Positions 32,495 through 59,407 of a DNA stretch of 64,000 bases are shown piece after piece; within the stretch, counting starts at the first letter, position 1; every line of letters begins with the position of its first letter. The notes below the pieces were generated by a model. The model made no database searches and was not told the DNA's origin. It saw only the letters and a list, made by a program, of their open reading frames with translations. The position numbers and the translations under genes were made by a program. Origin of the DNA: Lepidodermella squamata (lineage: Eukaryota > Animalia > Gastrotricha); assembly GCA_047495785.1 (NCBI GenBank), contig JBLDXI010000048.1, forward strand, positions 310,001 through 374,000. Reading direction: 5' to 3'.

Positions 32495-32818
32495 AGTAAA
32501 AAGATTAGCGCGTACAGTCGAACTCTTTTATTTTTCGAAGACGACGTTTCGGCAAAAGCGGGTGCCATCATCAGGTCATATATAAGGAAACAAAAATCTA
32601 AACAAAGATAGTATAGTTAAAGGCTACAACAATGAGATAGGGTTAATCGGTAGGGTTGTAGCCTTTAACTATACTATCTTTGTTTAGATTTTTGTTTCCT
32701 TATATATGACCTGATGATGGCACCCGCTTTTGCCGAAACGTCGTCTTCGAAAAATAAAAGAGTTCGACTGTACGCGCTAATCTTTTTACTTAAAATATCG
32801 AAAAACAAGTTAACTATC
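32495..32818. mobile_element. Miniature palindromic Penelope-like insertion (3'-end/pLTR only)
   Basis: 138-bp inverted arms (32493-32630 and 32655-32792), 24-nt spacer, 26-nt tail. 12-bp direct repeat gaaatgatggta at 32483-32494 and 32819-32830. Each arm carries a hammerhead core. Confidence 0.8.
32708..32745 (+). ncRNA. Minimal type I hammerhead motif (mirror copy on the minus strand at 32540-32577)
   Basis: gac-CUGAUGA-U-GGCA(loop)UGCC-GAAAC-GUC-guc: conserved core, 4-bp stem II, 3-bp stem I, palindromic ACGU stem III. Confidence 0.78.
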
Positions 32819-32831
32819 GAAATGATGGTAG

Positions 32832-33974
32832 TCAAAAGCAAGCAACGTCGATGAAATCAGTATTCGCTTTGTCCTGTAATTCTGGCCAAGTATTCTTTCC
32901 TTTATCCTGCTTTGTATCGTCGTCATTTTCGAACGGCAGCACAGGCTTTTGCTGTAAAATCAAAGATGCAAAGTAACTCGGAGGAGCCATTTCGTAGCCA
33001 GGAGCTGAAGGAAGTTGCTCGTAACGTTGAACCGTTCCCATTGTCACCGGTAACTTCAATCGAAGATTCCTAGACCAAGGAATTGATAGGGAAACCTCAA
33101 AATGGTACGTCACCGTAATATTCGGAGCTTCAATTGTTGGCAGAACAGCTGGCAATTTGAATTCCAAGCCCCATTTGCTCGAAGATCCTTTTGAGATGAT
33201 TTCGTCAGGAATCTTGAACCCAGGCATCAGTTGCAAATCGAAACGTTTAGTAGCAACATAAACCTCGCCACAATCAGCTGTGAACAGAGAGGTTTGAACC
33301 AGCTTCACGCCCGGTTTGACCTTTCGCGACGATAAGTTTTCGAAATTCGCATCGATACGTACTTGATCGCCCAGACTATAGTAGCCAGTTCTGTCGCATT
33401 TAGCTTCGATCTTGACCGGGCCGGATTTCAAGAAGAGGAAACCAGGCGTTTTTGACTTGGAGCCAGAGACTGGATCATTCAACTGGTCCAGCGTAATGTT
33501 CTCGACTACTTTGAAGTGTAGAGTCTTAGCTTTCGGCTTGAAAAGTGAAGCTAGCCAAGACGCTTCTGGCTTCGCATTGATCGAGTAGCGAATGTAGCCA
33601 ACTTCGCCTTCGAAAGAGGTTTTCAGCCCAGTCAGAGGCAGTTGGAAATTGACCAGCAATCGGTACCTGCCAGGTACTTGGTAGCTTGCCAGTTGAATCT
33701 TTTGCTGCATTGCCACCAACGTTCGTCGTGACGAATAAACATGAGTTGTTGAAGTGCTCGACTTCCCATCGCTCCTAGTTTCAGTTTCGGTCCAGAAAAC
33801 CTTGGAAATGCCTTCTAGGGTGACCACCAGAGTGATAGGGGCTGGGTTGCAGTGGAATAGCCGCTTTTCATTGACGATTTCATAATCGCAAAGAACTGAT
33901 ACGACATCACCGGGTTGATAGATTTGTTTAGCAGCGGAAGGTTCGAAAGTGAGTTGCAGAGACTTCAATCCCAT
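32832..33974 (-). CDS. Alpha-arrestin (ARRDC-like) 3, intronless
   Basis: Close paralog of arrestin 2. TSFEGEVGYIRY, LPVTMGTV, PPSY. Confidence 0.9.
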   Translation of the reverse strand: MGLKSLQLTFEPSAAKQIYQPGDVVSVLCDYEIVNEKRLFHCNPAPITLVVTLEGISKVFWTETETRSDGKSSTSTTHVYSSRRTLVAMQQKIQLASYQVPGRYRLLVNFQLPLTGLKTSFEGEVGYIRYSINAKPEASWLASLFKPKAKTLHFKVVENITLDQLNDPVSGSKSKTPGFLFLKSGPVKIEAKCDRTGYYSLGDQVRIDANFENLSSRKVKPGVKLVQTSLFTADCGEVYVATKRFDLQLMPGFKIPDEIISKGSSSKWGLEFKLPAVLPTIEAPNITVTYHFEVSLSIPWSRNLRLKLPVTMGTVQRYEQLPSAPGYEMAPPSYFASLILQQKPVLPFENDDDTKQDKGKNTWPELQDKANTDFIDVACF

Positions 33975-38523: not shown

Positions 38524-39267
38524 TTATCCTTTCACAGGGTTATAAAGTCGAAAAACGTCATCCAGAAGTTTCGAGTCCAATTTTCGCCCACCGATAAATT
38601 TGTTAGCAACGTTCCGTATAGACAAGAGATCGATAATTTCAGAATCAGTCATCTGGGGCTGAGATTCATCCATGTTACAGTCGTATTTCGCCACCAAAGT
38701 GTAACCAGGAGACCATAACCGCTTCGTTGATTTATACATGATGATGCCGTTTTTCAACACACGAAAATCAAAAATCGACTTATCGTTACATTGTTTCACC
38801 GCAGCGTCTAAAACGTAGTAGCGCTGCTTCAGGCCAAATAAGACATCGGGGTAGAAAATGTGAACACCGTCTTTACGACTAGGCCCACTTGTATCGATTC
38901 GGTCCTTTTCGCAAACGTAAGCATTAACCAGTTCCCTTGGAATACCAAGTTGCCGAGTCATCACAAGATTAATGTTTACTATAGCTTCGATAGCGACAGC
39001 TCTCGACCTTTTCACATGCTTGCCTTTCAATTTAATGTCCAAATCTACGATAAGAGGACCGACGTCTCGAAAATGTTCATGCATGTGGAGATTCAACGAT
39101 GGGTCAGCGGCGAGTCTTTTGTAGATCTCCATGAATTGTTCTTCATCTTTGATATGATAGTCAATATCGCTATTTGCAAGCTCGTAGTCGTTGAAAACTG
39201 ATTGTATCGAAGTATGCGTCGGACTTTCGACACAATTGTGAGGTTTCAAAAATTTCACAAGTTCCAT
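38524..39267 (-). CDS. Archaeo-eukaryotic primase (AEP) domain resembling the N-terminus of NCLDV D5/C962R-type primase-helicases; 247 aa, no helicase part
   Basis: THTS, motif I LIVDLD, motif II KDGVHIFYP, motif III IFD followed by IMYKSTK. Intronless. Start reassigned to MELVKFL, 67 nt after the upstream stop. Confidence 0.72.
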   Translation of the reverse strand: MELVKFLKPHNCVESPTHTSIQSVFNDYELANSDIDYHIKDEEQFMEIYKRLAADPSLNLHMHEHFRDVGPLIVDLDIKLKGKHVKRSRAVAIEAIVNINLVMTRQLGIPRELVNAYVCEKDRIDTSGPSRKDGVHIFYPDVLFGLKQRYYVLDAAVKQCNDKSIFDFRVLKNGIIMYKSTKRLWSPGYTLVAKYDCNMDESQPQMTDSEIIDLLSIRNVANKFIGGRKLDSKLLDDVFRLYNPVKG

Positions 39268-39334
39268 GTAAAATTCTAATTTCAAAAACAAATATTTGAA
39301 ATTCGCTGTTTTTATTAATAATTTCAAAAAAGGT

Positions 39335-41572
39335 TCAATCATGAGCGAGCTGATTGGTTTCCAAAGGACCTCGTGACCAGTGTTCGTTGCCAGCGATGAA
39401 ATCAGGCCGCACAATTTTAGCTCTCGCTCCTTTTTCTGTCCGAACGTATATGCCCTCAACCATTCCGTCGTAGAATCTCGATTCAGAGAACACGAAAGCC
39501 TTCAGTTCTTCAGCATTAAATTTCCCCCGAGCAATTAAGGGGACTTGGTTGATCGTCGTACCTTCCAGGACAGCTTCTAGTTCAGACCTGGTCGCAAATC
39601 GATTCGTATCAGCGTCGTAGAGATCGAAAGCTAGGAAGTAGTCGGGCAGCTTCGAGTAAGGAATTGAATGTCTCGCATACAACCATTCGCCGAACAGTAT
39701 CAAACCAGGCCTTAAAATCTTCCTCAACGACTCTTCATTGCGATCTCGCCATAAGTAGAGCTTCTTGAATTGGGCGTGGTAATCTGGGTCGACGAAGTGA
39801 GACCGATTTTGGAAGCCAATAACACCATTCGGGTCGACAGTGATCCCCATATTTGCACCATCGACCTTCTCCTCAACTATCACCTCTTGTCCACCTAAGA
39901 GTTTTTCAGGTCGATCAAGGATTAAATCATCTCGAGTCGCGGCGCCAAGGTTCATGAGATGCCTAGTTCTTGGAAACTTGATAATGTCAGCCCAAGGCTC
40001 TCGCCGGACACCAAGTTGTTGTAACAGAGCCGCAAAGTCTTCGTCATTCTTCACAACCTTCAAAACCTCTATTTCGTGGGGAAATTCAAGGTTTTTCATG
40101 GATTCCTCGACGATTTTCGGTCCGGTTCGGTTTTTCGAAGTCAACGTTTCGTGTTCTTCACGGTTTTCGAGTCGCTCAAGCAATTTTTCAAGGGGAAGTT
40201 GGAACAAGATGGCTTTGATCTTTTTATTCCAACTCAACCAATCAGCCCGGTCGCTGGCTTTAAGATTGCAGTTGTCGAATAAAACGTGGCCTTTCGCTTC
40301 TCGAGCTCGTTTCAACGATTCCTTCTTGCCGAATTTGTCTTGGTTCACATAAGTCACATCATCGTACTTCTTCATAATCATTTCGCATAGCGTGGATTTT
40401 CCAGAACAGGGCGGGCCGATCATCATAAGGGAAGAATTAAGGCGAGGAGCTCGGCAAAATCGATGGATTGCCTCGGTTTGTTCACTGGTGAGTCGAACTT
40501 TTGGCCTGGTTTTCTCCAGTTCGTGAATTGCGCTTTCAGCTTTGATTCCTTTTATGCGGGCTAGGTAACAAGCGAGGACGCAATTCGTCCGCCCGACCCC
40601 GGCTCGGCAGTGGACCAAAGTTGGAGCATCAGATTGCATGAGAGCAGTAACAATAGCTTCCATATCAGGCGGAGGATGGAAATCATCTGTCGGGAAGTGG
40701 TGAGTTTGAAGCGGCAGAGGCTTCTCAGTCAAATTGAAGACTCTTTTAATGCCCAAGGCAGCCAAAACCCGAGCGCTCCTCGGCTTACCACCGCCGTAAA
40801 TATTCGGGGTAACTTTCGAAAAATTTATCGGTAAATCGAGAACTGCGAAACCTTCTTCGTCGCAAATCGCCATTTTTTCTTCCAAACGAGAATTGACATG
40901 ATTGAGAACTTTTTCTAGATCATCACTTCTCCGAAGATTTTCGACAGATTTTAATTCATTGAGGCAAGTTTCGATATCGAACTCTTGACCTAAGTACTTT
41001 TGAACTGCGAATAAGATGCGATATTTCCGAACCGGGTCGCTGATCGATTCAGCCAAAGCTTGAGCTCTTGTAAATTTTCCAACATTTGCGTAAGTTTTCG
41101 CCAGGGCGTATAAAATGTCTTCGTTATCCGTAAATTTCTGCATGAAAAATTCGAGATTTGCCAAGTATTTCGTCGTATCTTTGCTAGGGTGATTGCAGAG
41201 TTTCTCAGCAGCATCATCCGCAAATTTTCGAATCGTTGTCACGTCTTTTCTTACTTCATGATTGTCGTAGCGGTTGAAGCCAATAGTTACATGGAAGTCT
41301 TTTGGCGGCAAATTCAATTTTCGGCGTAGTTCATCGCCTGCTGGGTAATGGCAAACAAGAAAGTAGCAGTCAGCGTTAATTCCCAAGCCGAGAATGTAGA
41401 AGTTTTTATCTCCTGGAAGCTCGGCTGCGACTTCGATTTCACCGGGTGCGATGATTGTTATATGATAATCTTCGCCATCTCTCGCATCACGGAATACTTT
41501 AAAGCCAAAGGGAACTTCGGCTAAATAAGGCTCGACTAGCGATTTGTCCACCAGTATAAATTGATGCTTCAT
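39335..41572 (-). CDS. Multidomain RNA end-healing/sealing enzyme: 2H phosphoesterase + PTP/DSP phosphatase + P-loop polynucleotide kinase + ATP-dependent RNA ligase
   Basis: HITI and HVTI (2H); HCRAGVGRT (CX5R); GPPCSGKST, NQD, DNCN (kinase); EEKVDG, FGEW, FLAFD, EGIYVR, AKIV (ligase motifs I, III, IIIa, IV, V). 745 aa, intronless. Confidence 0.9.
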   Translation of the reverse strand: MKHQFILVDKSLVEPYLAEVPFGFKVFRDARDGEDYHITIIAPGEIEVAAELPGDKNFYILGLGINADCYFLVCHYPAGDELRRKLNLPPKDFHVTIGFNRYDNHEVRKDVTTIRKFADDAAEKLCNHPSKDTTKYLANLEFFMQKFTDNEDILYALAKTYANVGKFTRAQALAESISDPVRKYRILFAVQKYLGQEFDIETCLNELKSVENLRRSDDLEKVLNHVNSRLEEKMAICDEEGFAVLDLPINFSKVTPNIYGGGKPRSARVLAALGIKRVFNLTEKPLPLQTHHFPTDDFHPPPDMEAIVTALMQSDAPTLVHCRAGVGRTNCVLACYLARIKGIKAESAIHELEKTRPKVRLTSEQTEAIHRFCRAPRLNSSLMMIGPPCSGKSTLCEMIMKKYDDVTYVNQDKFGKKESLKRAREAKGHVLFDNCNLKASDRADWLSWNKKIKAILFQLPLEKLLERLENREEHETLTSKNRTGPKIVEESMKNLEFPHEIEVLKVVKNDEDFAALLQQLGVRREPWADIIKFPRTRHLMNLGAATRDDLILDRPEKLLGGQEVIVEEKVDGANMGITVDPNGVIGFQNRSHFVDPDYHAQFKKLYLWRDRNEESLRKILRPGLILFGEWLYARHSIPYSKLPDYFLAFDLYDADTNRFATRSELEAVLEGTTINQVPLIARGKFNAEELKAFVFSESRFYDGMVEGIYVRTEKGARAKIVRPDFIAGNEHWSRGPLETNQLAHD

Positions 41573-42176: not shown

Positions 42177-44682
42177 CTACCAAACTATGCATTTGTTAGG
42201 ACGGTTCATCGGAGACTTGCCACAACTAAAAACCCTTGCGAAGTCTTGATTGTTCGAAACAGGACCATTAACTCTGTCAATAATTAATTCTTCACCAATG
42301 ATCAAGCATAGATTAAGATGAAATCAAACCTGAACTTCATGGGTGAATGAACATCTTGCAATATTTGCTGTTTCATCGCTTCTGGGGTCGCAATGTTACA
42401 GAAAACCTGAGAATAAGCAATAAAGAAAAGTTGGTCTCCAGTTAAATCAAGCCCAGGCAATGTTTTCCTGCTATTCGGAAGGCTCTTGTAAGCCAGATAA
42501 GCCGCTCGAAGTCCGCCATTATCTCCAATATTCTCCCCTAATGTTTGCTTTCCATTCAGGAATACTCCATTATCAGAGTACGAAGAATATTGATCCACCA
42601 AGCATTGAGCCCTGTTTTGAAACTCCCGTTTAGTCTCATTCATCCACCAATTGTTCAAATTGCCGAGTTTATCGTAATTACCACCCAGGCTGTCGAAACC
42701 ATGCCCGATTTCGTGGCCTACAATGTAGCCAATCACAGCATAGTTCAAAGCTGGATGCAGTTCTTTATCTGTGTAGAAAAATGGTGGACTCAGGATTCCG
42801 GCTGGGAGTACGAATTTGTTCTTTGTGGGCTCGTAGTAAGCATCGACAGTCTGTGGATTCATTACCCATTCGTTTGGATCAGGTATCTTCCGAAGTTGCT
42901 ACAAAGCCAATAAAAGTAGTTTGCAGAAATCAGAAGACACCAATCCTTATTACCCTTAAATTCTCTTCAATTTTGAATCGTTTTGCATTGACTGAATTTT
43001 CAACATAATCTTCCGTAACTTTGAGTTTCTCGTAGTAACTATTCAAATGGGTTTCATTCCTCAACCACTGAGGATAGGCCGATTCGTAAAGGAAAGCGTC
43101 AGATTTGTCCAAAGCCAGAATTTTCGTAGTTTGGTCCATCCAGTTAGCACCAGCGATAAGCTTCCTAAACGCAACTCTCACATCTTTGATCAGATTCGTT
43201 ATCTGAAAATTCAGAAAAGCTCCACAAATTGTCCGATAAGGAGTCTCGGCATACCATGATTTTGCCTTCCTCTTGGAAGAAGTTTTCAACATACATAGCC
43301 CCCAAGCCGAATCCGACGGCTGAATCAGTTTCAGCTAAGCAAGATTTCCAAGTGGGAGTCGCTCCGGTTTTTCCGCTGAGAACAGTCTCGAATTTGCTGT
43401 ATGCCTCTCCGAACTCTCCTCCGAAATCGTTGGCATAAAACGCCAACGCTCGGAAAGTAACATAATTTTGAATTGTTCGTTTTCCCTCCGGTGTAACTTG
43501 GAATTCATCTATAAGTGTCGATAATTTCGTAAAATACTCCGTGCCGTAAATCAAAACAGGTTCCATATATTGACTGATATAAATTTCAGGCTGGTTGGCA
43601 AAAACGCTTCTCGTGAACTGAACCCAATCGAGAAACCCAAAATTAGCATTCGCCCATTGGAGACTTCGCCTATTGTACTCGACTTCGACATTGAAAATGC
43701 GACTAAGCGGCAGTTCAATGTCTGCGAGTTTTTGCTCGAATTTAACGACTTCGGACACTAGGTTTTGGTCGACATATTCTGCCCCAAGTATAAGAACGGC
43801 GTAGGTATTTAAGAGTTCAATGTAAGCTGTTAAGACAGGATCGCTCAACTCCTTGCCCACGTAGTAATCTCGTGTCCCTCGGCCTATGCCCAAGCTGTTT
43901 GGGTAAATCAAAATGATATTCGAAGACACGTTTTTGTCATCAGTCGCAACTTGGAAATCGAAAAACCCAGCGGTATTATAGCGATTTCTGGCCTCTAGTA
44001 ATCTGCCCAAACTCCAAGATGGATGAATTTCTCGACTTCGCAGTAAAAACAATCCTCCTAAATCGTCGACAAGCTGCCTTAGAAAAACCTGAGCGCTAGT
44101 TGTGTTAGATTTTGCTTGGATGCAAGACTGGTAGAACTTTTGGGCTTTCAGTCTTGCTGTTTGCTTGCTAAGCGGCTCTTGACCTTCCAATAAGCCCCGG
44201 AGATTCTTCTGAACCAGTTCCGAGGCCTCCTGTACCGTTCCATACTGATTATAGTCGTTAGGTATGCTATGTTTTTCTGTGGTGACAGAATCTCTGAAAA
44301 AAATCCGGATCCTAACTAGAAACTTACTTTCATAGCCACCGCATGCATATTGGTAGAAATCGGTGCAGGGCATGACTGTTAGGTCCATATTTGCGATGAT
44401 GGATCCAGCAACCGTGACGCAACTTCGGCTTTTGCAAATTTTGTCATCAGCTGTTTTAAGCCTTTTCTCTCGATCGAGATGAACCGCGAGAATTATGACC
44501 ACGATCGAGAGGCATGTGATCGCAGAAATTAGGCACGTGATTAGTCGGTGTGTTGAAAACCAATTCCTAATCCGTTCACATCTTTCAGAGTCTGCAGGGT
44601 TGGAATGAAATTTCGATGAATGAATTGAATCGGATTATATTTTACCCCGAATTTCGAACCAGGCATTTCGCAACTTTTCCAT
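42177..44682 (-). CDS. Neprilysin/ECE-family (M13) zinc metallopeptidase, multi-exon type II membrane protein
   Basis: N-terminal TM, PCTDFYQYACGG, VDAYY, HEIGH, GENIGD, HSP, C-terminal CIVW. Short introns explain the ORF breaks. Confidence 0.92.
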
Positions 44683-48057: not shown

Positions 48058-49926
48058 TCAATCGATAAGCTCATACAAGAACAGCATAGCATTTTCATCA
48101 GTCTGGAAAACAAAAGGCATCAAGTTTGGGGCTTTTATAACGAAATCAATGAAACTAACCAAATAATCCTCTGCCAAATTGACCTGATCATCGTTGAACA
48201 TCAGCCATTTGTTCATGCCTTCATTCCATGCATAGGCGTAAAAATGGCCACAAGTTACCTGGCCTCGGTGGCAAATCACTCCAATCAATCGATAGCATGG
48301 CTTCTTCTTCGGCCGATTCTCCTCAGGGCAATCCTTGTGCATGTACCTGGAAACGTCGAGTTCTGCCGGGTAGGAATAGAAGTCCCAGCCAACTTTGGAT
48401 AAAACACCCCTTACATCCCGCTTGCAACGAAGGAGGTAGAGAGTTAGGTACTTGGGCAACGACCAAATGTATTTTTGCGATGACATATAATGTCTGGTCG
48501 GATATTTTGCTCCAACACTGTTTTGGACTATATTCGACCTGCCAAAGTACTGGCCTAGCTGTTTGACAATGCTCCGACCAGAGAACGAATAGTAGCTACT
48601 GTCCACATCTAAGATGATTGTGCTGAACGGTTCGACGCTGCTTTCACTGCCACTTTCGGTAACCATGTGGCCGTAGAATAGATCGATAATCATTGATTGG
48701 TTACGTTCACCATACAACTCAGTCTGTTCTGGAACATAAAACTGCACCATGTAAAGATTTCACTTTCAGGCGAGATAATAGATATTCAAAGGAAACCCGA
48801 AAATAGCTGTGAAATCTGTGCCTGAGCTTGAAACTGAGTGCTGATATCCCCCAATTACGAGAAGCACCAACTACTTGACCTACTTAATAAATATCGTAGC
48901 TGATTAGCTCACTTGTGCACATCCGCCGAAGATCAGTTTCGTCGATAACTCGGTAAGCTTCCGCATCTCCCACATTCAATTCGGCATGAAGCTGTCGAAG
49001 TATGATCGTCATGACATCGAGCAAATCGTGATGCTCATTCGTCGAAAATCTGTTGTCGATTCGTGCCAGTTGTCGCTTCACCAGCAACGAATCAGTCGCC
49101 TTTTCATGAGACCATAGAGTCGCAATGGTCATAGCGATCGAGTTGAAAAGCGGACCACGCTTCTGAGGCCATTCTTCCAGGCAGATGCGTTTGAAACCCT
49201 CCGCGTGGCTTAGACATTGCAACAAGCTATTAAGATAGCACTGGGAGCAAAACTTCGATAATCAAGAACTAGCTGATTCTTACGTTGTTGTCAACGTTCC
49301 TAAGGCCAGTTGCACCCAGAGGAGTGACTTCTTCCGGCGGCGTCACTTCTTCAGCAGGCTGCTGAGTTTTCTTTTGGCCTCGGCGCTTTGCAACCGCCTT
49401 TGTAGCTAAAGGTGCATTCTGATTGTTGGTAAGTACTTGGCTTGATGCGGCTGGCAAACTTTTACCAGTCGGTTTGGTAGAAGGGCGCTTCACGACAACT
49501 CTGGTCTCGTATTCGTCGCAATCCATTCCAACCGGCTCAGGTCGGGAAAGAACTTGGGGCTGAGGGACTGAGACCTGCTTATTCGAGCCCTCCAGCTCAA
49601 TCATAAAAGTTTCGACTGTAACAATTGAATAGCAATTATCAATCTGCAAACGATGGAAACAACTACCTGCTTGCTTTGAATGGCTGCCAAGGATTGAACC
49701 ACATTTCTTGCAGAAGAAACTGCCAGGCAAGTACTTTTGGCAATTGCAAGTCGTACATTTACCATACAAGCCTGTTTTTTGGACAAAAAATTGATTTTCA
49801 GGATTCAATCAGTAAATCCTCACCCCCAGTATGATAGTACTTCTGGCAAAAGCAGAAAAGACACGAATCGTAATCAGAGTAAGATCCAAGCTCGAATTTG
49901 TCACATCGGCTTATGTAAACCGTCAT
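48058..49926 (-). CDS. USP-family (C19) protease A with a Cys-rich N-terminus, multi-exon
   Basis: Spliced Cys box GLRNVDNN|CYLNSLLQ, His box VICHRGQVTCGHFYAY, WLMFND. First exon 49926-49824 is MTVYISRCDKF...CLFCFCQKYYH. Splicing between 48742 and 48912 is uncertain. Confidence 0.8.
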
Positions 49927-50009: not shown

Positions 50010-52852
50010 TTAGGGGCGTTGCGCAGGAACTTTGTTGTCAGAGCGAGATAGGAAGTACCACAGCATAACACCGCAGCCGATAGTCGTAACAAAACCAACA
50101 GCTATCAACGTACCAATTTTAGCCTTTTTTGAGAATCGTCGCTTCTTCTGAGCGTCTCCGTCAAGTAACGGAGCGTCAATCGCGCAATCTTCATTCGCAA
50201 CGGCAGTTTCGTTGGCTTCACCTTCGATAGAGCCGTAGCTCAGAGGGCGATAATCAGAAAAAGAAGGTGGCTCACTTGGCGAGGGTAGAACAGGCTGTTC
50301 AACAGTGATGGGTTCGTCAAACTTGGCGGGAGGCTCAATGCCAGGCTGGTCGAGATTAGCGGTGAGTTCTGGCAATTCAACTGTCTGCTGATCAACCTTT
50401 CGATAGACAAACAGGCATGCGTTAGAGTTGCTCGAGAAGTGGTTGCTACTCGGCAGCTTTTCGATGCTGGTATCGTTGAAGACGAACCAATCTTCGCCAC
50501 GCTTCGAGTAGGTGAAGTAATGGCCATGCTCGAGTGAGCCGGAGTGATTGATAACGGAAATGAGCTCGTAAGCAGCAAGATTCGCGGAGCAATCGGGAAT
50601 CTCAAGCCTGGAAGAATAAATTGGAAATTAATCAGATTCGAAATCAATTAACCTACCTTTTCGGATATGAGACGTGGCTATCGATTTTCGACCTGCGCCC
50701 AGTCATCGGATCCTCTTCAATCCTAGCCAGTTGGACGATAAGATACGGCGGGCACGTCTCAATGCAACGTTTCTCCAGGTTGAAAGCGTTTTCATAGCAG
50801 AATGGGCAAGGGTCATCCTTGAAATTTCGAACCTTCTCAGCAAAATGTTGGTCGAGCATGTCGTTCAACGTGAGTGACCGCTGGCGATCTTCGTCATTGA
50901 ACGCGAGAATCAAAATGTTGAAGCACTGAAACGCCGAATATGCTGGAATGACTTTGTGGCATTTAGGGCATTTAGCTATCGCGTTCTCTTGAAATCGAAA
51001 GAGGCGAGCGATCTCAGACATGTAGCAACTCGAATCGTACTGCCAATTTTCTGTTTTTCGAAGAATTCACACATTCAAGTTACATAATCAAATAAATCCA
51101 GGTTACTTTGGGCAACTTCGCGGCAAGATTCCTGGCCAACAGCTTGGATGATTTGAAAAGGAGGCTGCTCAGCAACTTCGCTGCACTCGGCGTGCAGTTT
51201 TTGAAGAACACACGTCACAAAATTCATCGCATCATCTTGCCGACCGATGTGAAACGGCCGGACTCGAGACGAAACTGCGGTTCGAATGTCTGTCGGATCG
51301 TGGTAAGATCCCGGCGTTTCATAGGCCAACTTCATGAACTTGGCAAACGTTCGAGTTGTCGGTTGGGAAGAAGGATGACTTGTGAAGTATCGATACAACT
51401 CTTCAATCGGCAGGATTGCCTGAAGAGCGCTGTTGACGTAGCACTGCAAAAAGAAAAAAGAAACTAAAGAAACAGAAAAAGAATAGATCTTACGGTATTG
51501 CCAACGTTTTGAAGCCGGATAGCTGGCTTGATCGCCATGCCTCGGAATTGAAACTCTGCAAACCTTTGCTTGAACCTTTCCTCAGCTTCCTGATTGGACG
51601 CAGCCGGCAGCTTCGCCTTGGCAGGCGGTTCGTCATCGCTCGATCGCTGGTTCGCCTTGCGACGCGTTGCCTTCTCGTTCCTCGACGAAGACTTGCTCCT
51701 GCTATCATCAGCCCACTCGACATCAGCAGGATCGTGCGGCGGCGCGGACGCTTGGTTCTTCCTGCCCTTGCGATGGTGCTTGTGGCTCTTCTGGTCAGGA
51801 CTCGCGAGGTTTTCGATATCCATCTGCGATTTGTCCAAGTGCGGCTTCTTGTTAACAGGGCTTGGCAACTCAGCTGGCGGTTGTTCGGAGTTATCTTTCG
51901 GTTGGAATGCGGACTTCGCGGATTTCTTGCTATGAAGAGAAGAGGGAGTACCAGTTTGCTTGCTAGCTTCATTCTTCGGCTCTGAATCTTGAACAGCTTT
52001 GGGCGGATGGTGGTAAATCGATTGTGACAACTGGCCAAATCGGGGCTGGTTTTTAATCTCAGCGGGCAAAGCAGAAGGTTCTGAAGGTTCATGGCCAGCC
52101 TCCTGCGGGGATTCCTTAACTGCAGAATCTTGCGAACTAACAGTTTCCGATTTCTCTTGTTTCATCGGAACAGTAGCGTCTGGAACCTTTTCGACTTCCA
52201 AATTCAGCTCACTGGTGATAATTGCCGATTCGTGAATAGGCGCTTCGACGTTCTCCCGATCAGCCGAGACTTGATCAGCAGTTTGGATCGGATCCTCTGA
52301 TTGTTGTTCCATCGGTTCGACTTGGCCGGCAGATGATTCTTTGATCTCAGCATCGACAACAAAACAAGGTTCCAGTGACGATTTCTCATCTTTCGGGGCG
52401 GAAATAACTGCTGAAATTTCGGCCGAGTCAATGGTTTCTTGAAGAGTAGGTATTGCTTCAAGATCCAGTTGTTCGGTTTGGCGAGGAGCCGAGTCATCGG
52501 ATTTGCTCTCGCCACCTGCTGCTGTAGGGAGATCGGCTTCAGTAACTGAAGATGGCTGCAAAGACGGTACCGCGTCAGATTCGTGATTGGCAGGTTTCTC
52601 TTCAACCATCATTCGTTCAACTTCGCAAGGAGCTGAGTCTTCGGGTTTCCTCTCAACAGATGGCTCAGAACCAGTAACCAAAGATAGTTGATTCGGCATT
52701 TCTCCATCTTTCGCCTTGGACAAGACATTCGAAGTTTCGGGCAAGTTCTGAGCCGGTTTTTCTTCAATCGGAGCCGATTGTAGCTTGGAATCAGGCGCTG
52801 TCTCAGCAACGGCCTTGTTCTTATTCTTGCCCTTGTTCTTGCCTTTTCCCAT
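50010..52852 (-). CDS. USP-family (C19) protease B with a long disordered N-terminus and a C-terminal transmembrane anchor, multi-exon
   Basis: Spliced Cys box LQNVGNT|CYVNSALQ, RQDD, CPKC/CPFC, His box VINHSGSLEHGHYFTY, WFVFND, then IGTLIAVGFVTTIGCGVMLWYFL close to the C-terminus. Confidence 0.87.
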
Positions 52853-52953
52853 TTTGGTGGGTAAAAATTATTTTAACAGTATCTAAAATAAGCGAACGAA
52901 TTCGAAGTAGCTTGGATAATAACGTTATTTATCAAGAGTTCAAAGTTCGAAGT

Positions 52954-53814
52954 TTAGCTCCGCGGGCGTTGGCTGGTTTGACGGGCGATTTCACGGCATC
53001 GAGATTCGTACTCAGCGGGATTTTTCAGGAGCAAGTCAGCAGCTTCGCCATTGAGGGCGCTGTCCGGGTTCGGGTTCAGCAAAAGTGAAGCTAGACATTC
53101 CAAAATAGCGGCGACATCCATTTTAGGATCCCAATGTTCTGGCTTCAGGTGACTAACGCAAATGCCACCGATTGAATTAACTGTCATGGTAAATTTATTT
53201 ATTTTAGAAATAATCATGCCATATTAAGTACAGAAAATCAATAAATTTAATAGGGAAAAAATTCGTAAAATTGAAGAATGTTACAAGAAGTTGAAAGAGT
53301 TAAAATCCCATAGAAACAGAAACTTAGAAATAATTTAGAAAGAATAGAATTTTTAAAATTCAAGATAATTCCAAAATATCTGAAAAATCAATAATTTCCG
53401 CAGCTTTTGAAATTAAAAATATAAATAAAATTCGAAATCTATGCAAAATTCATTTATCAAATTCTAGGAAATTTTTAAAAAATTCTAGAAAGTTGTTGAG
53501 GATATTTACTGTTAGGGTGGAACATGGTGTCGAGAAATTTGACGATTGGCGGCAAAGCAGGGTAGTTTTGCGGGAAATCCAGTTGAACTCGAAAAATGCC
53601 CATGGCATAGGGCGATTTAGCCGGGCCGAAGATAAAGCCGCGCCATCGGAATAGGTTATCATCGACCGGCGACGCGGTTCCGCATGAGTGCGGATGAGTA
53701 AGCACCCTGCAATTGAAACAATTTGATATAATATTTGAAATTTAAATTATAAATTAATAAATACTTGTTCAAATCGTTTTGTAGGCGAAGAGCGCCGGTT
53801 AAATTACAAGCCAT
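52954..53814 (-). CDS. Divergent E2 ubiquitin/UBL-conjugating enzyme; 3 exons
   Basis: RLQNDL, DNLFRW, GPAKSPY, FPQNYP..PP, FHPN|INSIGGICVSHL (catalytic Cys), WDP, PNPDSALN. Confidence 0.92.
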
Positions 53815-54184: not shown

Positions 54185-54553
54185 TACAGCGTGTCCCATA
54201 AATAAGGCAAGCAAAGAAAATACCCGGAAAAGGTTTCAGAAACTCTAAACTGAGCCTTTCAGAAACTTTTTATAAAAGTTTAAAAAAATCACGAGAAACG
54301 TAAATTTAAGTATATCACTTGCGTAATGCGATAAAAAATTTCCGGATAAATTTGGTCCAACAGGGTAAAATACCGAAAATTACCGAACAAGTTACCATTC
54401 GGGGTTTTCCGGGTTTTCTTCGGTGAGTTTTTTTATTTCTTCGATTAAATCGCAGATAAAATTTGGGATATTCTCTCGGTAGGTTTGATTTATAAAATTA
54501 GTTGAATTCCCTACACAACATTATTAGTTGCGCAACTTCTGGGGCACGCTATG
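54185..54553. mobile_element. Possible degenerate mariner-type MITE between the UBL and E2 genes
   Basis: Imperfect inverted termini tacagcgtgtccca ... tggggcacgctatg. Confidence 0.35.
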
Positions 54554-54931
54554 TGAAGATTTCCGATTTTTTGCAATTTCATGAGATTTTTAGAATTTTA
54601 CAGGATTTTCGGAAAATCTTGCTTAAAATTTAAGACGCGCAATGGCATTCTGAGTTTTCAGTTTTATCGACCCTTGGAGGTCCAACTTCGAAAAATAATT
54701 ATTAACAGATGCGGCGCATCATCAGTCTTAAAAAAAATAAGAAAATTTTTCTCGGATATTTGACTCACAGCAAATTCACAGCAAATGTTTGGTACAGATT
54801 TTATTATCGAAATAATTCGAATTCGAAAAATGGTACCACTGATTAAATCATGAATTTCAAGTTGATTAATTTTTTTACAAAAAATGCGGTCAATTTAAGT
54901 TAGTAGCGACGAAAACGCGCGCTGAATTCGT

Positions 54932-55192
54932 TCAAGCGTGACGGCTGCCGCCTTGAATGCGCGGAACAACGTGGATGGTGTGGCGCGGTTGGATGCCGAT
55001 CTGAGCCAGCGTCTGATTCTCATCGAGTTGATTACTGCCGTGCAAAATGTTGACGTTGTTCGTAACTTGAGCGCCAGCCACTGATTCGAGCATGCGAACA
55101 ACCTCACGCACCGTGTCCTTGGGCGATACGTTCACCTTGTACAGCTCACTGTGGCCGAATACATTGAAGGTGATGTCGAAGCGGTCGGACAT
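54932..55192 (-). CDS. Divergent ubiquitin-like modifier precursor (86 aa; di-Gly plus 4-aa extension)
   Basis: Beta-grasp signature VSPKDTVREV, QLDENQTLAQIGIQ..TIHVVPRIQGG followed by SRHA. The sequence does not match ubiquitin, NEDD8 or SUMO as I recall them. Confidence 0.9.
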   Translation of the reverse strand: MSDRFDITFNVFGHSELYKVNVSPKDTVREVVRMLESVAGAQVTNNVNILHGSNQLDENQTLAQIGIQPRHTIHVVPRIQGGSRHA

Positions 55193-56012
55193 GATATGTT
55201 TTTCAATTAAATAATTGATCTATCAACAGTTTTACGTGGAATATTTTTATTTTGAAGCTTCATCCGATTATTTATATGTAAAAATTTAGGTTAGACTTTC
55301 ATCTTACATATTCTTTGAAACTTGGCCAATGTGTCGCACGTGTTTGGCACGGCCCTGTGAAAAATGAGTCATAACTTAGCGCACGCGCTTCTCATTTCTT
55401 TCTATTATGATTCATACTCGAAAAAAATTGGCAATCAACAGCGAAAAAATTGAATTATTTCAATTTAATTTTTGATCGAGTTAATGGCACCGCTAAAAGC
55501 CGGGTTCCATAGGCGCCAAATGTTTCTGATTCTTTGAATTTTCGGCATAGTTTAGCGATGAAAATTTTCAATTCATGTCGTTTAGCCTCGATAGCGGGCT
55601 TGGAAAATCTTATGAAAATATCTAAAAATTAATTTCTCAATATTTTCTCTGATGACATGACATTTTTCTCAAAATTACATGGTGCGAAATCTGAGTTCTG
55701 AGGTAAATTCGGGACTTTCGGGAAAAAGCTCCTTGTAACAAATGTTCGTTAAATTTGCGAATACCTGAGATTCCATAATTTCTTTAAATTTACCGAATTC
55801 GGTAATTTTCCCATTTTATTTTCGGGATTTTATTCCTCTCATTGACAGGTGATCTTTTTTTATGACCTTTCTGAGCCCCGAGACCTCATTCAATCTCATT
55901 CTCTGTGATTTATTTCCTCCTTCTTTTTCTCCTTTATTCAATGAAATTTTTAGACATTTTTAGATTGATTTACGAAAAATCAAGATTTCTTGTCTAATTA
56001 ATCGCGACGGCT
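55193..56012. promoter_or_regulatory. Putative bidirectional promoter shared by the UBL and E1 genes
   Basis: 820 bp separate the divergent start codons. TATA-like element on the minus strand near 55270, CCAAT 55326, CACGTG 55337, TGAGTCA 55365, TGATTCA 55408. Confidence 0.45.
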
Positions 56013-59000
56013 ATGACTATGAATAACGACATCGACGAGTCTTTGTATTCACGACAGCTGTACACCCTCGGCGAGTCAACGATGCGTAAAATGGCAGGCG
56101 CCGATGTTCTCATCAGCGGACTCAATGGCTTGGGCGCCGAAATCGGCAAGAACGTCATTTTAGGCGGCGTTCGCTCCGTCACGCTTCACGACACAAAAAC
56201 TACGCAAATTTCGGACCTTGGAACCCAGGTAAATTTCTCATAAATTTTATTTCAAAATTTTATTTAAATTATTTATTTTATTCAAGTTCTATCTGACCGC
56301 TAATGACCTGAACAAAAATCGAGCTGAAGCGAGCAGGCATCGATTTGCTGAGCTGAATCCTCACGTTCGCGTCGAAGCAACCGACGAGAGCCTTGCCGTG
56401 GATTACGTCTCAAAATTCCACGTATGCAATATTTAAAGATTTATTAAATTTATCAAAATTTAGTGTTGTTCAGGTTGTCGTTCTCTGCGATCACGTAATT
56501 GACGATAAAACGAAGGAGATGGGCAAATGGTGCCACCTAAACGGGGTCAAGTTCATTCTAGCTTCAACTCGCGGTTTATTCGGCCAGCTCTTCTGCGATT
56601 TCGGTGAAAAATTTGAAGTGATTGATCCAACTGCTGGCGAGCCATTGTCGCGTCTTGTCGACTCAATCAACCGTAGCAGCGACCCGTCATCGCCTCATTT
56701 GGTCAAGCTGGTCGAGCAAACGGGTTCGAGAGGTTTTGTTCCGGGCAATCTGGTGACATTCGCCCTAGATCGATCGGTTCCTGGGGCGGAAGGGGATCGC
56801 CGAACTTGGGGACCTTTTCGCATCTCTGCTACGATAACCGCTGATATTTTCTCTATTGAAGCCGATTGCGAGATGCCACCAAGCAATAAATGCATCGTAA
56901 CCCAGGTAACTTGGTAAGTTAGATGGTCGGTCCTGTATGAAATCTCTATTTGCAGATCAAACCCAGCAAATCAATGTCATTCAAGCCTCTAGCTGAAGCC
57001 GTAGCCGAACCTAAATTCCTGATCACCGATTTCGGAAAAATGGGCCGGGAATCTACGATCCACCGCGCCTTCTGCCTGCTCGGCGAATCTGGTGACTCGC
57101 CAACCGCTGGAAACGAAGAATTTGCCCGGAGATTCTCCGAACGTTTCGAAGAAGAAGGCGACAAGCAAATCGCAAAGGCCTTCGCTCTTCAAGCTACCGG
57201 TAACTTGTGCCCGATGAACGCTGTTATCGGAGGATTCGCGGCTCAAGAAATCTTCAAAGCTGTATCAGGGAAATTCGTCCCGCTACATCAATTCATGTAC
57301 TTTGACGCCTTGGAATGCCTGGCCGAGGACCAAGAACCCTTCGAATTGCCATCGACTCCGAGTCGCTACGACAGCCAAATCGCAATTTTCGGCCAGAAAT
57401 TTCAGGAGAAGCTCGAAAAGTTGAAATTATTCGTAGTTGGCACCGGTGCGATCGGCTGCGAATTGCTCAAAAACTTCGCGATGATGGGCGTGGCCTGCTC
57501 GAAAGATGGCCACCTCCTTACAACCGACATGGACGTCATCGAAAGATCGAACCTGAACCGCCAATTCCTGTTCCGGCAAAACGATGTGAAAGAGCCTAAA
57601 TCGAAGGTTGCCGCTGCTGCGGTCAAGGCAATGAACCCTGATTTGAATATCGAGTATCATTTGAGCAAAGTTGGGCCTGAGACCGAAGATATCTACGACG
57701 AAGATTTCTACGACGATTTGGATGCAGTTGTCAACGCGTTGGATAACCGCCAGGCTAGGGAATACTTGGACAAGCGTTGCATCTACCATTTGAAGCCAAT
57801 GTTCGAATCAGCGACAAAGGGCGTAATCGGCTCCACAAAGGTTTCTTTTTCAATTCATCATAATTTGGAACTTCGGAACTTTGAAGGGTTCCAGCCCTGA
57901 ACTTTCACCTCAATTTGAACCTCGAATTAAGTTCTGGAACCTTTTTCTCTAGGTAATTCTGCCATCTTTGACTGAACCTTACTCGGCTGGCTTAACGGCT
58001 TCGGACGAACCTTCCTACGCCCTGTGTACGATCAAAAGCTTCCCAAACGCCATCGAGCATACGCTTCACTGGGCACGTGAACAATTCCACGATTTGTTCG
58101 TCTCGCCAGCCCAATACGCCAAACGATACGCGACAGAGGGCGAGCAATTTCTTGCCAATCTCCAGCCTATTGAACGATTGAAAGCCGTCGAGAGCTTGGC
58201 GCAGTTTCTGGTCTTGGAAAATCGACCTTCTAACTTCGAACAATGCGTCACATGGGCTTGCTCGAAATGGCAAGAGTTCTTTCATTCGGAAATTGCTGAG
58301 TTGACCGAAAAGTTCCCCCGGGATCAAGTTGGGTCCGATGGGCAGCCGTTTTGGAACAATGCCAAAAGATTCCCGCGAGCTTTGAACTTTGATCTGGGCA
58401 ATGTTAGTTTGTTTCTCTAGTTCTGAAGTTTATTGAACCTTTTCCTACAGGAGCTTCATGTCGATTTCGTTAGTTCAGCAGCCAATCTTTACGCAAGCTT
58501 GTTCGGTATCGCCCAGGTTCGGGACAAGTCAAAAGTTCGAGAAATCGCTTCAAAGGTTGAGCTGAACTTCAAACCTCGTGAAAAGCCGTTGATTGCCGAG
58601 AATGACCGTGAATTGCAAGTTCTGATACAAGAGCGAGCTGAGCAAATGGAGGCGAAGGTCACGGAGTTACTCGCGAAGCTTCGAGACCAGACTAAGATCG
58701 GTGGCAATTCGATTACGCCGATCGAGTTCGAAAAGGATGATGATTCGAATTTTCATCTCGACTTCATTGTCGCGGCTTCAAACTGCCGGGCTGAGAACTA
58801 CTTCATCGAACCTGCCAATCGGCAGAAGAGTAAACTTATCGCTGGAAAGGTTCCTTCGATCTTTTTTGTCGTTCATTGTTGATTGAAGTTGTTACAGATC
58901 ACGCCAGCTATTGCGACTACAACAGCGATTGTAGCTGGTCTAGTTTGCTTGGAACTTGTCAAATTCGTTCAGGGCCATTCGCAGTTATCCAAGTTCAAAA

Positions 59001-59407
59001 ACGCAGCTATCGACCTGTGCCAACCTGCTGTGATTATGAGCCAGCCTCGTGCTGCCAAGCTGGAACCACCCTATGCTCCCAACGCCCCAAGTTGGACAGT
59101 TTGGTCCCGGTTCAGCTTCGAAAACCCTCAAGTTACATTGGGCGAAATTCTGGAGACACTCCTCAATCAAGATGGGGTTGTAGTTGGCATGGTTGCGGTT
59201 GGTAACGACGTTATCTATAACCAGGTGTTGATGTCTGCTGAGAAGAGGCAGCAGCGGCTCAATTGCACAGTACGGCAGTTGATCGAGAAGTTTTATCCGA
59301 AGATTTCCGCTGCGGTGAGCAACAAGAAATCAATCCGCCTCGACATGGCTTGTGTCGGCGATGATGGCTCGATGCTGGCCATGCCATTCGTTCGCTGCGT
59401 TTTGTGA
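56013..59407 (+). CDS. Divergent monomeric UBA1/UBA6/UBA7-type E1 activating enzyme; 7 exons, about 1008 aa
   Basis: Exons 56013-56228, 56287-56421, 56474-56905, 56956-57840, 57953-58402, 58451-58849 and 58898-59407 all join in phase 0. Motifs [41 protein letters not shown], catalytic [24 protein letters not shown] and a C-terminal UFD. Confidence 0.95.

What the first reader, a model, noticed from the sequence alone, without database searches (positions are those of the whole stretch)
54932..55192. Divergent UBL lacking K48/K63 equivalents and needing proteolytic maturation
Manual alignment to ubiquitin: QQRLIFAGKQL becomes NVNILHGSNQL (R42>N, I44>L, K48>N), NIQKEST becomes GIQPRHT (K63>P), and VLRLRGG becomes VPRIQGG. 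Only two lysines are present (K19, K25). The SRHA tail after GG must be removed before activation, which would explain the linked USPs. Inference: a mono-modifier, or one forming atypical chains, that canonical ubiquitin readers would not recognise. Trypsin would leave an IQGG remnant rather than GG, so standard diGly proteomics would miss it.
Basis: partly seen in the sequence, partly recalled or inferred. Interest (0 to 1): 0.8.

Follow-up and report, generated by a model that had tools for sequence, protein, structure and literature searches.

The report
Private ubiquitin-like tag gene, expressed
A small invertebrate transcribes a gene for a very divergent ubiquitin-like tag that sits beside its own activating, conjugating and removing enzymes, so it probably runs a private protein-tagging pathway that has not been described.

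Summary
Window 54932-55192 (-) is an intronless 86-codon gene for a ubiquitin-fold protein ending PRIQGG-SRHA. None of ubiquitin's seven lysines is kept; K19 and K25 are the only lysines.

It is a real gene. A spliced, poly(A)-bearing assembly (run X1) covers it as a separate unspliced mRNA. That mRNA ends at 54775, 25 nt after an AATAAA.

No closer relative than ubiquitin itself (about 26-29% identity) was found. I searched 1.84 billion protein representatives, metagenome contigs, viral contigs, solved structures and papers.

The neighbours are an intact UBA1-type E1 (head-to-head), a divergent E2 and two divergent but catalytically intact USPs. All five residues of the E1 pocket that reads ubiquitin Arg72/Arg42 in UBA1 are changed. 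Its FCCH domain is unrecognisable to Pfam. So it is probably a dedicated paralogue.

Best reading (about 0.6): a lineage-restricted ubiquitin-family modifier. It is trimmed to Gly82 and conjugated by its own cascade, like ISG15/UBA7 or FAT10/UBA6.

The claim that ubiquitin readers cannot bind it is not supported. Arg72, His68 and Val70 are kept, and Ile44 is replaced by Leu.

Processing and conjugation are untested. The scan noted this system before on another piece of the same genome (s1-430921, s1-430858).

The parts
54932..55192 (-). UBL precursor CDS, 86 aa plus stop, intronless. The mature part (residues 1-82, ending RIQGG) is 54947-55192.
   Evidence: ORF. Pfam ubiquitin E 2.5e-8. Alignment to ubiquitin. 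Beta-grasp model with pLDDT 81.9. Foldseek best matches are ubiquitin.
54935..54946 (-). Codons of the C-terminal propeptide S83-R84-H85-A86, beyond Gly81-Gly82.
   Evidence: Sequence. A variant in DNA run X2 lacks 54944-54946 (the Ser83 codon, giving GG-RHA) and carries V76I. The tail length therefore varies while the GG is kept.
54775..54931 (-). 3' UTR of the UBL mRNA. AATAAA lies at 54805-54800 and the poly(A) addition site at 54775.
   Evidence: In run X1 a contig ends at 54775 with 21 non-genomic T on the + strand. Depth is zero at 54500-54699 and 55300-55899. The hexamer was read.
55193..56012 (.). 820-bp AT-rich spacer between the divergently transcribed UBL and E1 genes. It is a candidate shared promoter region.
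   Evidence: Coordinates. No RNA-type coverage at 55300-55899. Promoter function is inferred, not tested.
56013..59407 (+). UBA1-type E1 gene: 7 phase-0 exons, 1008 aa. Catalytic Cys581 is in [10 protein letters not shown], and the ATP motifs and UFD are present.
   Evidence: Introns with GT..AG ends of 48-112 nt. The 58229-, 56422-, 56906- and 58403-type junctions are listed as joints in X1 and the 57841-57952 one follows from a spliced X1 contig; the last intron (58850-57897 region, 58850-58897) was placed by reading frame and GT..AG ends only. Pfam finds ThiF, E1_4HB, UBA_E1_SCCH and E1_UFD but no E1_FCCH. The best solved relatives are human and yeast UBA1, ahead of UBA6 and UBA7 in the adenylation and SCCH parts; in the FCCH exon UBA7 scores marginally higher.
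57832..58027 (+). E1 codons for the pocket and crossover loop that read ubiquitin Arg72/Arg42 in UBA1 (spans intron 57841-57952). Here they are S554, K556, G569, L570 and T571 plus a one-residue insertion, then catalytic Cys581.
   Evidence: HMMER alignments to human UBA1 in native numbering give N606>S, Q608>K, S621>G, Q622>L, D623>T, with C632 kept. The roles of these residues come from PMC9378703 and PMC12355090.
52912..53814 (-). Divergent class-I E2 gene: 3 exons, 156 aa, with the HPN motif and catalytic Cys kept. CDS is 52954-53814; introns are 53181-53509 and 53706-53763; poly(A) site at 52912.
   Evidence: Spliced X1 contigs and a poly(T) loose end at 52912. Model. Pfam UQ_con. Best solved relatives are Rad6/UBC4 at only 60 + 44 bits.
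50010..52852 (-). USP-B. It has a long low-complexity N-terminus, a Cys box GLQNVGNT|CYVNSALQ (split by a small intron), a His box GHYFTY...FND, and a C-terminal hydrophobic helix.
48058..49808 (-). USP-A. It has a Cys box GLRNVDNN|CYLNSLLQ and a His box CGHFYAY...FND. It is very divergent from all solved USPs.
   Evidence: The best PDB match is 38.7 bits.

Best explanation
The ORF encodes the precursor of a lineage-restricted, single-domain modifier of the ubiquitin family.

Shown:
- The gene is intact and has a ubiquitin fold.
- It ends in RIQGG followed by a four-residue tail.
- It is transcribed as its own unspliced, polyadenylated mRNA.
- It lies in one 11-kb block with an intact UBA1-type E1 (divergent, 820 bp away), a divergent E2 and two USPs whose catalytic motifs are intact.

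Inferred mechanism:
1. A protease, most simply one of the two adjacent USPs, removes SRHA and exposes Gly82.
2. The adjacent E1 adenylates Gly82 and forms a thioester on its Cys581.
3. The tag passes to the adjacent E2 and then to lysines of unknown targets. No E3 is linked.
4. The USPs reverse the mark.

The E1 is probably dedicated to this tag and is not the housekeeping ubiquitin E1. The tag has lost Arg42 and Arg74 and keeps Arg72. In parallel, the E1 has replaced all five UBA1 residues that read Arg72/Arg42 (N606S, Q608K, S621G, Q622L, D623T plus one insertion) and has an FCCH domain that Pfam no longer recognises. With only two lysines at non-ubiquitin positions, any chains would differ from ubiquitin's. 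The system is the same kind of thing as ISG15/UBA7/UBE2L6/USP18 and FAT10/UBA6/USE1, but arose independently from a UBA1 duplicate.
For: - Gene and fold.
- Expression: run X1 shows GT..AG-spliced E1 and E2 contigs that are absent from DNA run X2. Depth is zero in introns and spacers. A non-templated poly(A) tail sits at 54775, 25 nt after AATAAA.
- No closer relative than ubiquitin: the word search was blank. A full HMMER scan of 1.84 billion representatives listed only poly-ubiquitin-like multi-domain proteins, and the best single domain scored 28.7 bits. The protein is not on record in public gene calls. Metagenome and viral contigs gave nothing.
- Linked machinery intact: E1 model of 1008 aa without stops; E2 with HPN and Cys; USP Cys and His boxes.
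- E1 specificity elements changed: read against PMC9378703 and PMC12355090. There is no E1_FCCH hit, and the FCCH exon aligns weakly.
- E2 and USP-A are far from every canonical orthologue.
- A variant keeps GG but drops Ser83, as expected for a discarded tail.
- A second, roughly 10% divergent E2 copy is also expressed and shows 13 synonymous against 8 non-synonymous codon changes.
Against: - No protein-level data exist: no processing, thioester or conjugate has been seen.
- Run X1 is only guessed to be RNA by its record. I infer RNA from splicing and poly(A).
- The contigs do not define the 5' end of the mRNA, and coverage of the first ~12 nt of the CDS is not certain.
- The E1 core is about as similar to human UBA1 as a housekeeping orthologue of a fast-evolving lineage could be. 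I could not locate another UBA1 in this genome.
- UBA6 shows that a changed Arg72 pocket can still take ubiquitin.
- Arg72 is kept in the tag, so cross-activation by a ubiquitin E1 is possible.
- The lineage is poorly sampled, so 'no relatives' partly reflects missing genomes.
- Hits 151-798 of the HMMER scan were not shown, so a single-domain relative scoring 33-57 bits could be hidden there.
Confidence: 0.6

Rival explanations
1. The UBL is real, but the neighbouring E1 is simply the animal's housekeeping ubiquitin E1 and the E2 and USPs are ordinary ubiquitin enzymes. On this reading the linkage is coincidental or only regulatory. The UBL would be activated, if at all, by the general ubiquitin machinery through its retained Arg72.
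For: The E1 adenylation and SCCH cores are closest to UBA1 (185 and 122 bits to human UBA1). The tag keeps R72, H68 and V70. UBA6 tolerates pocket changes and still activates ubiquitin.
Against: All five Arg72/Arg42-reading residues, which are conserved from yeast to human UBA1, are replaced, including the Asp that UBA6 still needs for ubiquitin. The FCCH is unrecognisable. The E2 and USP-A are far more divergent than canonical orthologues. Five functionally matched genes in 11 kb is unlikely by chance.
Confidence: 0.15
2. The protein is a free, non-conjugated ubiquitin-like regulator or decoy. For example, it could bind or inhibit the adjacent USPs or E2, or serve as a shuttle domain. The GG would then be an inherited relic.
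For: Many ubiquitin-fold proteins are never conjugated. No conjugates have been shown.
Against: The GG is kept in both variants while the tail behind it changes length. An intact E1 with a catalytic Cys and a UFD, and an E2 with a catalytic Cys, are linked to it.
Confidence: 0.15
3. The cassette is a recently endogenised fragment of a giant virus or other mobile element, not a host pathway.
For: The window holds a virus-like AEP-primase plus RNA-repair gene pair at 38.5-41.6 kb, and Penelope-like elements. Giant viruses encode ubiquitin-system genes. One structural neighbour cluster in the ESM Atlas is mostly from Nucleocytoviricota.
Against: E1, E2 and both USPs carry host-type GT..AG introns of about 50 nt that are spliced in RNA. 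The IMG/VR scan found no relative of the UBL. The E1 core is closest to animal UBA1. PADLOC shows no bacterial Bil/CBASS-type match beyond the generic ThiF fold.
Confidence: 0.05
4. It is a transcribed but functionless, decaying duplicate of ubiquitin.
For: It is an orphan sequence.
Against: The ORF is intact and the fold is confidently predicted from a single sequence. GC3 is 68% against 33% GC in the flanks. The variant changes are conservative (V76I, tail deletion in frame). All four partner genes are intact in this copy.
Confidence: 0.05

Closest known systems
ISG15 with UBA7 (E1), UBE2L6 (E2) and USP18 (vertebrates)
   Same: Both are lineage-restricted ubiquitin-family modifiers made as a precursor with a tail after GG. 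Both have a private E1 derived from UBA1 with the full FCCH/SCCH/UFD layout, a private E2 and a private USP-family protease.
   Different: ISG15 has two tandem ubiquitin-like domains and ubiquitin's own LRLRGG tail. This protein has one domain and PRIQGG. In the adenylation and SCCH parts the E1 here scores closer to UBA1 than to UBA7. The vertebrate genes are not in one cluster. Induction by infection is unknown here.
FAT10 with UBA6 and UBE2Z/USE1
   Same: Both have a tail that departs from LRLRGG (CYCIGG in FAT10, PRIQGG here), read by a UBA1-type E1 whose Arg72 pocket residues are changed.
   Different: FAT10 is a two-domain protein with no propeptide. UBA6 keeps the sensor Asp and also activates ubiquitin. 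Here the specificity residue is still Arg, and the E1 has lost that Asp at the aligned position.
Ubiquitin
   Same: It is the closest sequence and fold found: 26-29% identity and TM about 0.8. Same length class. Gly-Gly, Arg72, His68 and Val70 are kept, with Leu in place of Ile44.
   Different: None of the seven lysines is kept. Arg42 and Arg74 are lost. There are four or five extra N-terminal residues. It is a single-copy gene with a four-residue tail, not a poly-ubiquitin or ribosomal fusion.
Bacterial Bil (ISG15-like) operons: UBL + E1 + E2 + DUB
   Same: It is the only well-known case where tag, E1, E2 and protease genes sit side by side as one unit (10.1101/2023.09.04.556158, seen).
   Different: There is no sequence match of the UBL, E2 or USPs to PADLOC models. 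The E1 here is the eukaryotic multi-domain UBA1 type and the proteases are USPs. The genes have spliceosomal introns and separate mRNAs.

Membership tests
Ubiquitin family (Pfam PF00240), type-I conjugatable UBL | Beta-grasp fold with the ubiquitin sequence profile | tested here: met
   PF00240 scores 34 bits, above the 25.4 cut-off. The AlphaFold model has the order strand-strand-helix-strand-short helix-strand, with pLDDT 81.9. Foldseek's best matches are ubiquitin chains at TM about 0.8.
Ubiquitin family (Pfam PF00240), type-I conjugatable UBL | Gly-Gly at the end of the flexible tail after the last strand, exposed directly or after removal of a short propeptide | tested here: met
   G81-G82 align with ubiquitin G75-G76 and are followed by SRHA.
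Ubiquitin family (Pfam PF00240), type-I conjugatable UBL | Covalent attachment to targets through E1 and E2 thioesters | not testable with these tools
   Only the linked, intact E1 and E2 genes are seen. No biochemical data exist.
Ubiquitin proper | Near-invariant 76-residue sequence with K6, K11, K27, K29, K33, K48, K63 and an LRLRGG tail | tested here: not met
   26-29% identity, none of the seven lysines, and a PRIQGG tail.
NEDD8 | Ala at position 72, which excludes the ubiquitin E1, and high identity to ubiquitin | tested here: not met
   Position 72 is Arg (R78). NEDD8 chains are only 18-20% identical in Foldseek. The role of residue 72 is from PMC12355090.
ISG15 / FAT10 | Two tandem ubiquitin-like domains in one polypeptide | tested here: not met
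   The protein is a single 86-aa domain. The mRNA ends 157 nt after the stop, and an in-frame stop precedes the ATG.
SUMO (Pfam Rad60-SLD) | SUMO-type profile as the best match, Gln/Glu at position 72, and activation by a heterodimeric SAE1/UBA2 E1 | tested here: not met
   Rad60-SLD scores below the ubiquitin profile (31.2 against 34 bits). Position 72 is Arg. The linked E1 is a single-chain UBA1 type.
FUBI (FAU) | Ubiquitin-like domain fused to ribosomal protein eS30 | tested here: not met
   FUBI-eS30 scores the same as ubiquitin (26.6 bits). Here only four residues follow the GG, and the mRNA is polyadenylated soon after.
UBA1-type (canonical single-chain) E1, for the neighbouring gene | IAD/AAD ThiF repeats, a 4HB, an SCCH with catalytic Cys, and a C-terminal UFD | tested here: met
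   Pfam hits. The Cys aligned to human C632 is kept.
Housekeeping ubiquitin E1 (UBA1 orthologue), for the neighbouring gene | Arg72/Arg42-reading residues N606, Q608, S621 and D623 (human numbering), conserved from yeast to human | tested here: not met
   They are S, K, G and T, with a one-residue insertion. Their roles are described in PMC9378703.

The most novel reading that the evidence does not exclude
An animal lineage has independently built a further complete UBA1-derived tagging cascade, alongside ubiquitin/UBA1, FAT10/UBA6 and ISG15/UBA7. It has a new single-domain tag (RIQGG end, no ubiquitin lysines), a re-tooled E1 pocket, and its own E2 and two USPs. All are kept together as one 11-kb co-inherited block, an arrangement otherwise known from bacterial defence operons. 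It may serve a stress or immune role.
Probability: 0.45. Interest if true: 0.75.

Novelty: new member of a known kind. Interest (0 to 1): 0.6.

Why it matters
New conjugatable ubiquitin-family modifiers in animals are rare. Each known one (ISG15, FAT10, UFM1) opened a field.

This case offers a natural experiment in how an E1 and its tag co-diverge. The tag lost Arg42 and Arg74, while the E1 lost every residue that reads Arg42/Arg72.

The tight gene linkage gives a ready-made minimal set to reconstitute: tag, E1, E2 and two proteases.

Practically, diGly-remnant proteomics would miss this mark. Searches need a K+355.186 Da (IQGG) remnant instead.

Tried and rejected
- **Word-index protein search with the UBL:** no candidate.
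- **Exact-product look-up:** not on record.
- **Back-translated scans:** JGI metagenome contigs were scanned with the UBL and with the E1 exon holding the unusual crossover loop, and IMG/VR with the UBL. All were blank.
- **Full HMMER scan:** the visible list (150 of 798 hits) is filled by poly-ubiquitins ranked by summed repeats. Re-scoring the domains showed none better than 28.7 bits. The unseen hits limit the absence claim.
- **ESM Atlas:** searches by features and by shape gave only generic ubiquitin/Rad60-SLD clusters.
- **PADLOC:** nothing except the generic ThiF fold, so a bacterial Bil/CBASS origin is rejected.
- **Other copies in the window:** tblastn of the UBL against the window found no second copy.
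- **Organism identification:** an M13-peptidase exon has only 27-29% identical vertebrate relatives at E<=1e-30. Other agents' notes guess a rotifer; I could not verify this.
- **A second UBA1:** not found through the scan's notes.
- **Papers:** searches for a clustered eukaryotic UBL cascade, for 'IQGG', and for rotifer UBLs found nothing relevant.
- **Errors of mine:** one PDB search used the wrong frame and was repeated correctly.
- **Not attempted:** the full-length E1, E2 and USP proteins could not be sent to the large searches or to structure prediction. Spliced products have no reference, and I did not paste long sequences.

Full report
**What is there**

Window 54932-55192 on the minus strand is an uninterrupted 86-codon ORF. 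It starts at the first ATG after an in-frame stop and has an A at -3. The product is MSDRF...VVPRIQGG-SRHA.

It passes Pfam's curated threshold for the ubiquitin family (PF00240, E 2.5e-8, 34 bits against a cut-off of 25.4). The SUMO-type Rad60-SLD profile comes second. No Ufm1, Urm1 or Atg8/12 profile appears.

HMMER against all solved structures aligns residues 19-83 with ubiquitin 14-77. My alignment to a canonical ubiquitin unit taken from a tool-returned polyubiquitin gives 19 identities in 73 columns.

| Ubiquitin residue | This protein |
|---|---|
| R42 | N48 |
| I44 | L50 |
| K48 | N54 |
| K63 | P69 |
| K11, K27, K29, K33 | E16, V32, M34, V38 |
| L71-R72-L73-R74-G75-G76 | P77-R78-I79-Q80-G81-G82 |

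The only lysines are K19 and K25, at ubiquitin positions T14 and S20. The N-terminal register is uncertain because sequence aligners disagree there. From the model's strands, beta-1 is 5-11 and beta-2 is 17-22. K6 then falls on N10 or V11, and Leu8 probably on F12; the sequence aligner instead placed K6 on H14. No register gives a lysine at K6.

So are His68 (H74) and Val70 (V76), and Ile44 is conservatively Leu.

**It is a real, expressed gene**

- A single-sequence AlphaFold2 model is a beta-grasp with mean pLDDT 81.9. Only the last residues (the tail) fall below 50.
- Foldseek's best solved matches are ubiquitin chains (TM 0.75-0.81, 21-25% identity), with NEDD8 just behind.
- The CDS has 55% GC (GC3 68%), while 500 bp on either side have 33%.
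- Two public runs hold the locus.
  - Run X2 behaves as genomic DNA, with continuous cover and no splice joints.
  - Run X1 is recorded only as 'RNA?', but it behaves as RNA. It has zero depth in every intron and spacer. It has GT..AG joints in the E1 and E2 genes that X2 lacks. It also has non-templated poly(T) ends on the + strand at 52912 and 54775, which are poly(A) tails of minus-strand mRNAs.
- The UBL mRNA therefore ends at 54775. That is 25 nt downstream of an AATAAA at 54805-54800.
- It is separated by silent DNA from both the E2 mRNA and the E1 mRNA.
- The contigs do not define its 5' end.

**Variation**

Run X2 also carries a variant with an in-frame 3-nt deletion at 54944-54946 and C>T at 54967. 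These remove Ser83 from the tail (giving GG-RHA) and change Val76 to Ile. The di-glycine is untouched and the tail length varies, as expected if the tail is discarded.

This matches an earlier scan note on another piece of this genome (s1-430921, 'GG-RHA tail'). So the scan has seen this system before on other DNA.

**Relatives**

- The word-index search found nothing.
- The exact product is not in the public gene-call index.
- An exhaustive HMMER scan of 1.84 billion representatives gave 798 hits at E<=1e-3.
  - The 150 shown are all proteins of 243 aa or more with 3-14 ubiquitin-like repeats and 21-36% identity.
  - When I re-scored single domains, the best was 28.7 bits and the rest were 25 bits or less, the same as ubiquitin itself.
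  - So nothing scoring 57.7 bits or more as a single domain exists in that library.
  - A relative at 33-57 bits could be hidden among the hits that were not shown.
- Metagenome and viral contig scans were blank.
- No paper contains 'IQGG' together with 'ubiquitin-like'.
- The lineage is poorly sampled. An M13-peptidase exon of this window has only 27-29% identical vertebrate relatives at E<=1e-30. Absence of relatives must be read with that in mind.
- Other agents' notes guess the animal is a rotifer. I could not confirm this.

**Surroundings**

On the minus strand, in order, lie four genes:

1. **USP-A (48058-49808).** Cys box GLRNVDNN|CYLNSLLQ and His box CGHFYAY...FND.
2. **USP-B (about 50010-52852).** A long low-complexity N-terminus, Cys box GLQNVGNT|CYVNSALQ, His box GHYFTY...FND, and a C-terminal hydrophobic helix.
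3. **A three-exon E2 (CDS 52954-53814).** HPN motif and catalytic Cys present.
4. **The UBL.**

Across an 820-bp spacer, on the plus strand, lies a seven-exon E1 (56013-59407). It has 1008 aa, no stops, and all introns in phase 0. The first five introns are supported by X1 contigs; the last (58850-58897) I placed from the reading frame and its GT..AG ends.

USP-A's best solved relative scores only 38.7 bits. The two E2 halves score 60 and 44 bits to Rad6/UBC4. These are far below what canonical orthologues give. No E3 is linked.

**The E1**

- Pfam finds ThiF (twice), E1_4HB, UBA_E1_SCCH and E1_UFD. It finds no E1_FCCH even at E<=1.
- The exon holding the FCCH aligns with solved E1s only over its inactive-adenylation part.
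- The adenylation core is very like UBA1: 185 bits over 137 residues to human UBA1, against 159 for UBA6 and 146 for UBA7.
- The catalytic cysteine aligns with human Cys632.
- Published structures assign recognition of ubiquitin Arg72 and Arg42 to UBA1 N606, Q608, S621 and D623. The residue before the Asp acts as a sensor. These positions are the same from yeast to human. UBA6 still depends on the Asp for ubiquitin (PMC9378703; PMC12355090).
- In this E1 the aligned residues are S554, K556, G569, L570 and T571, with a one-residue insertion.
- The splice junction that crosses this segment is supported by an RNA contig.

The parts of the E1 that touch the modifier have diverged, while the catalytic core has not. 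The modifier has changed two of the three arginines that the crossover loop reads. This is the pattern expected of a dedicated E1-tag pair. It argues against this being the housekeeping ubiquitin E1. It is not proof: loop alignments are uncertain, an acidic pair (D-E) follows three residues later, and I could not find the presumed canonical UBA1 elsewhere in the genome.

**Selection on the block**

Run X1 also contains a second E2 transcript that is about 10% divergent. Among the 21 codons whose changes were listed, 13 are synonymous and 8 are not. Four of the eight sit in residues 96-102, just after the catalytic Cys. The list is partial (23 of 32 differences). It fits a duplicated cassette whose copies are both expressed and mostly under constraint. 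I could not check that.

**Most likely mechanism (confidence about 0.6)**

The precursor is trimmed after Gly82. Gly82 is then adenylated and thioesterified by the neighbouring E1, passed to the neighbouring E2, and attached to target lysines. It is removed by the neighbouring USPs.

The gene, fold, transcript, linkage and intact catalytic motifs are shown. Processing, pairing and conjugation are inferred. Trypsin would leave K-IQGG (+355.186 Da).

**Rivals**

| Rival | Confidence |
|---|---|
| The E1 is the ordinary ubiquitin E1 and the linkage is incidental | 0.15 |
| The protein is a free, non-conjugated regulator | 0.15 |
| Viral or mobile origin | 0.05 |
| Decaying duplicate | 0.05 |

Viral origin is disfavoured by the spliced host-type introns, the blank viral scan, and the absence of a bacterial defence-system match. 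A decaying duplicate is disfavoured by the intact ORF, the composition and the conservative variants.

**Comparison with known systems**

It works like ISG15/UBA7/UBE2L6/USP18 and FAT10/UBA6/USE1: a lineage-restricted ubiquitin-family tag with a UBA1-derived private E1. It is not a member of any of these families.

- It has a single domain, not two.
- Its tail is PRIQGG.
- Position 72 is Arg, which excludes NEDD8 and SUMO types.
- It has no ribosomal fusion, which excludes FUBI.

The side-by-side arrangement of tag, E1, E2 and proteases recalls bacterial Bil operons, but there is no sequence link.

I file it as a new member of a known kind.

Noticed in passing
window 54190-54500: Between the E2 and UBL genes lies a fragment of an extremely high-copy dispersed repeat. 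Word depth in DNA run X2 is 6,800 to over 100,000, against about 55 in the flanks. There is no internal tandem or inverted repeat.
   Followed up: partly
window 2946-4145 (-) and 4163-5362 (+): An inverted pair of 399-aa ORFs, each with reverse-transcriptase and GIY-YIG endonuclease matches. This is a head-to-head pair of Penelope-like retroelements.
   Followed up: no
window 38524-41572 (-): A 745-aa 'Swiss-army-knife' RNA-repair ORF (2H phosphoesterase, PTP-type phosphatase, kinase-like P-loop, RNA ligase) lies next to an AEP primase of the C962R type. Earlier notes call this a giant-virus-like pair.
   Followed up: no
window 1464-2348 (+) and 6454-7311 (+): Two IIGP/IRG-like immune-type GTPase ORFs flank the Penelope-like pair.
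   Followed up: no
window 29362-33974 (-): Three tandem arrestin-fold genes (363, 378 and 380 aa).
   Followed up: no
window 53069-53705 (E2 exons): Run X1 holds a second expressed E2 transcript that is about 10% divergent, with a slightly shifted splice joint (53180>53512 with two extra letters). Among 21 listed codons, 13 changes are synonymous and 8 non-synonymous, with four of the eight in residues 96-102 after the catalytic Cys.
   Followed up: partly
window about 50040-50110 (-): USP-B ends in a hydrophobic helix (IGTLIAVGFVTTIGCGVMLWYFL), so it may be a tail-anchored membrane protease.
   Followed up: no
window 43165-44502 (-): An M13 (neprilysin-type) peptidase exon has best relatives, among 5.8 billion proteins, that are only 27-29% identical (vertebrate MMEL1). 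This indicates a poorly sampled or fast-evolving lineage.
   Followed up: partly
window 55945: The X1 contig for the E1 mRNA starts at 55945, preceded by nine letters (CGATTTTCG) that do not match the genome. No splice acceptor precedes this point, so it is unclear whether they are a leader or an artefact.
   Followed up: no
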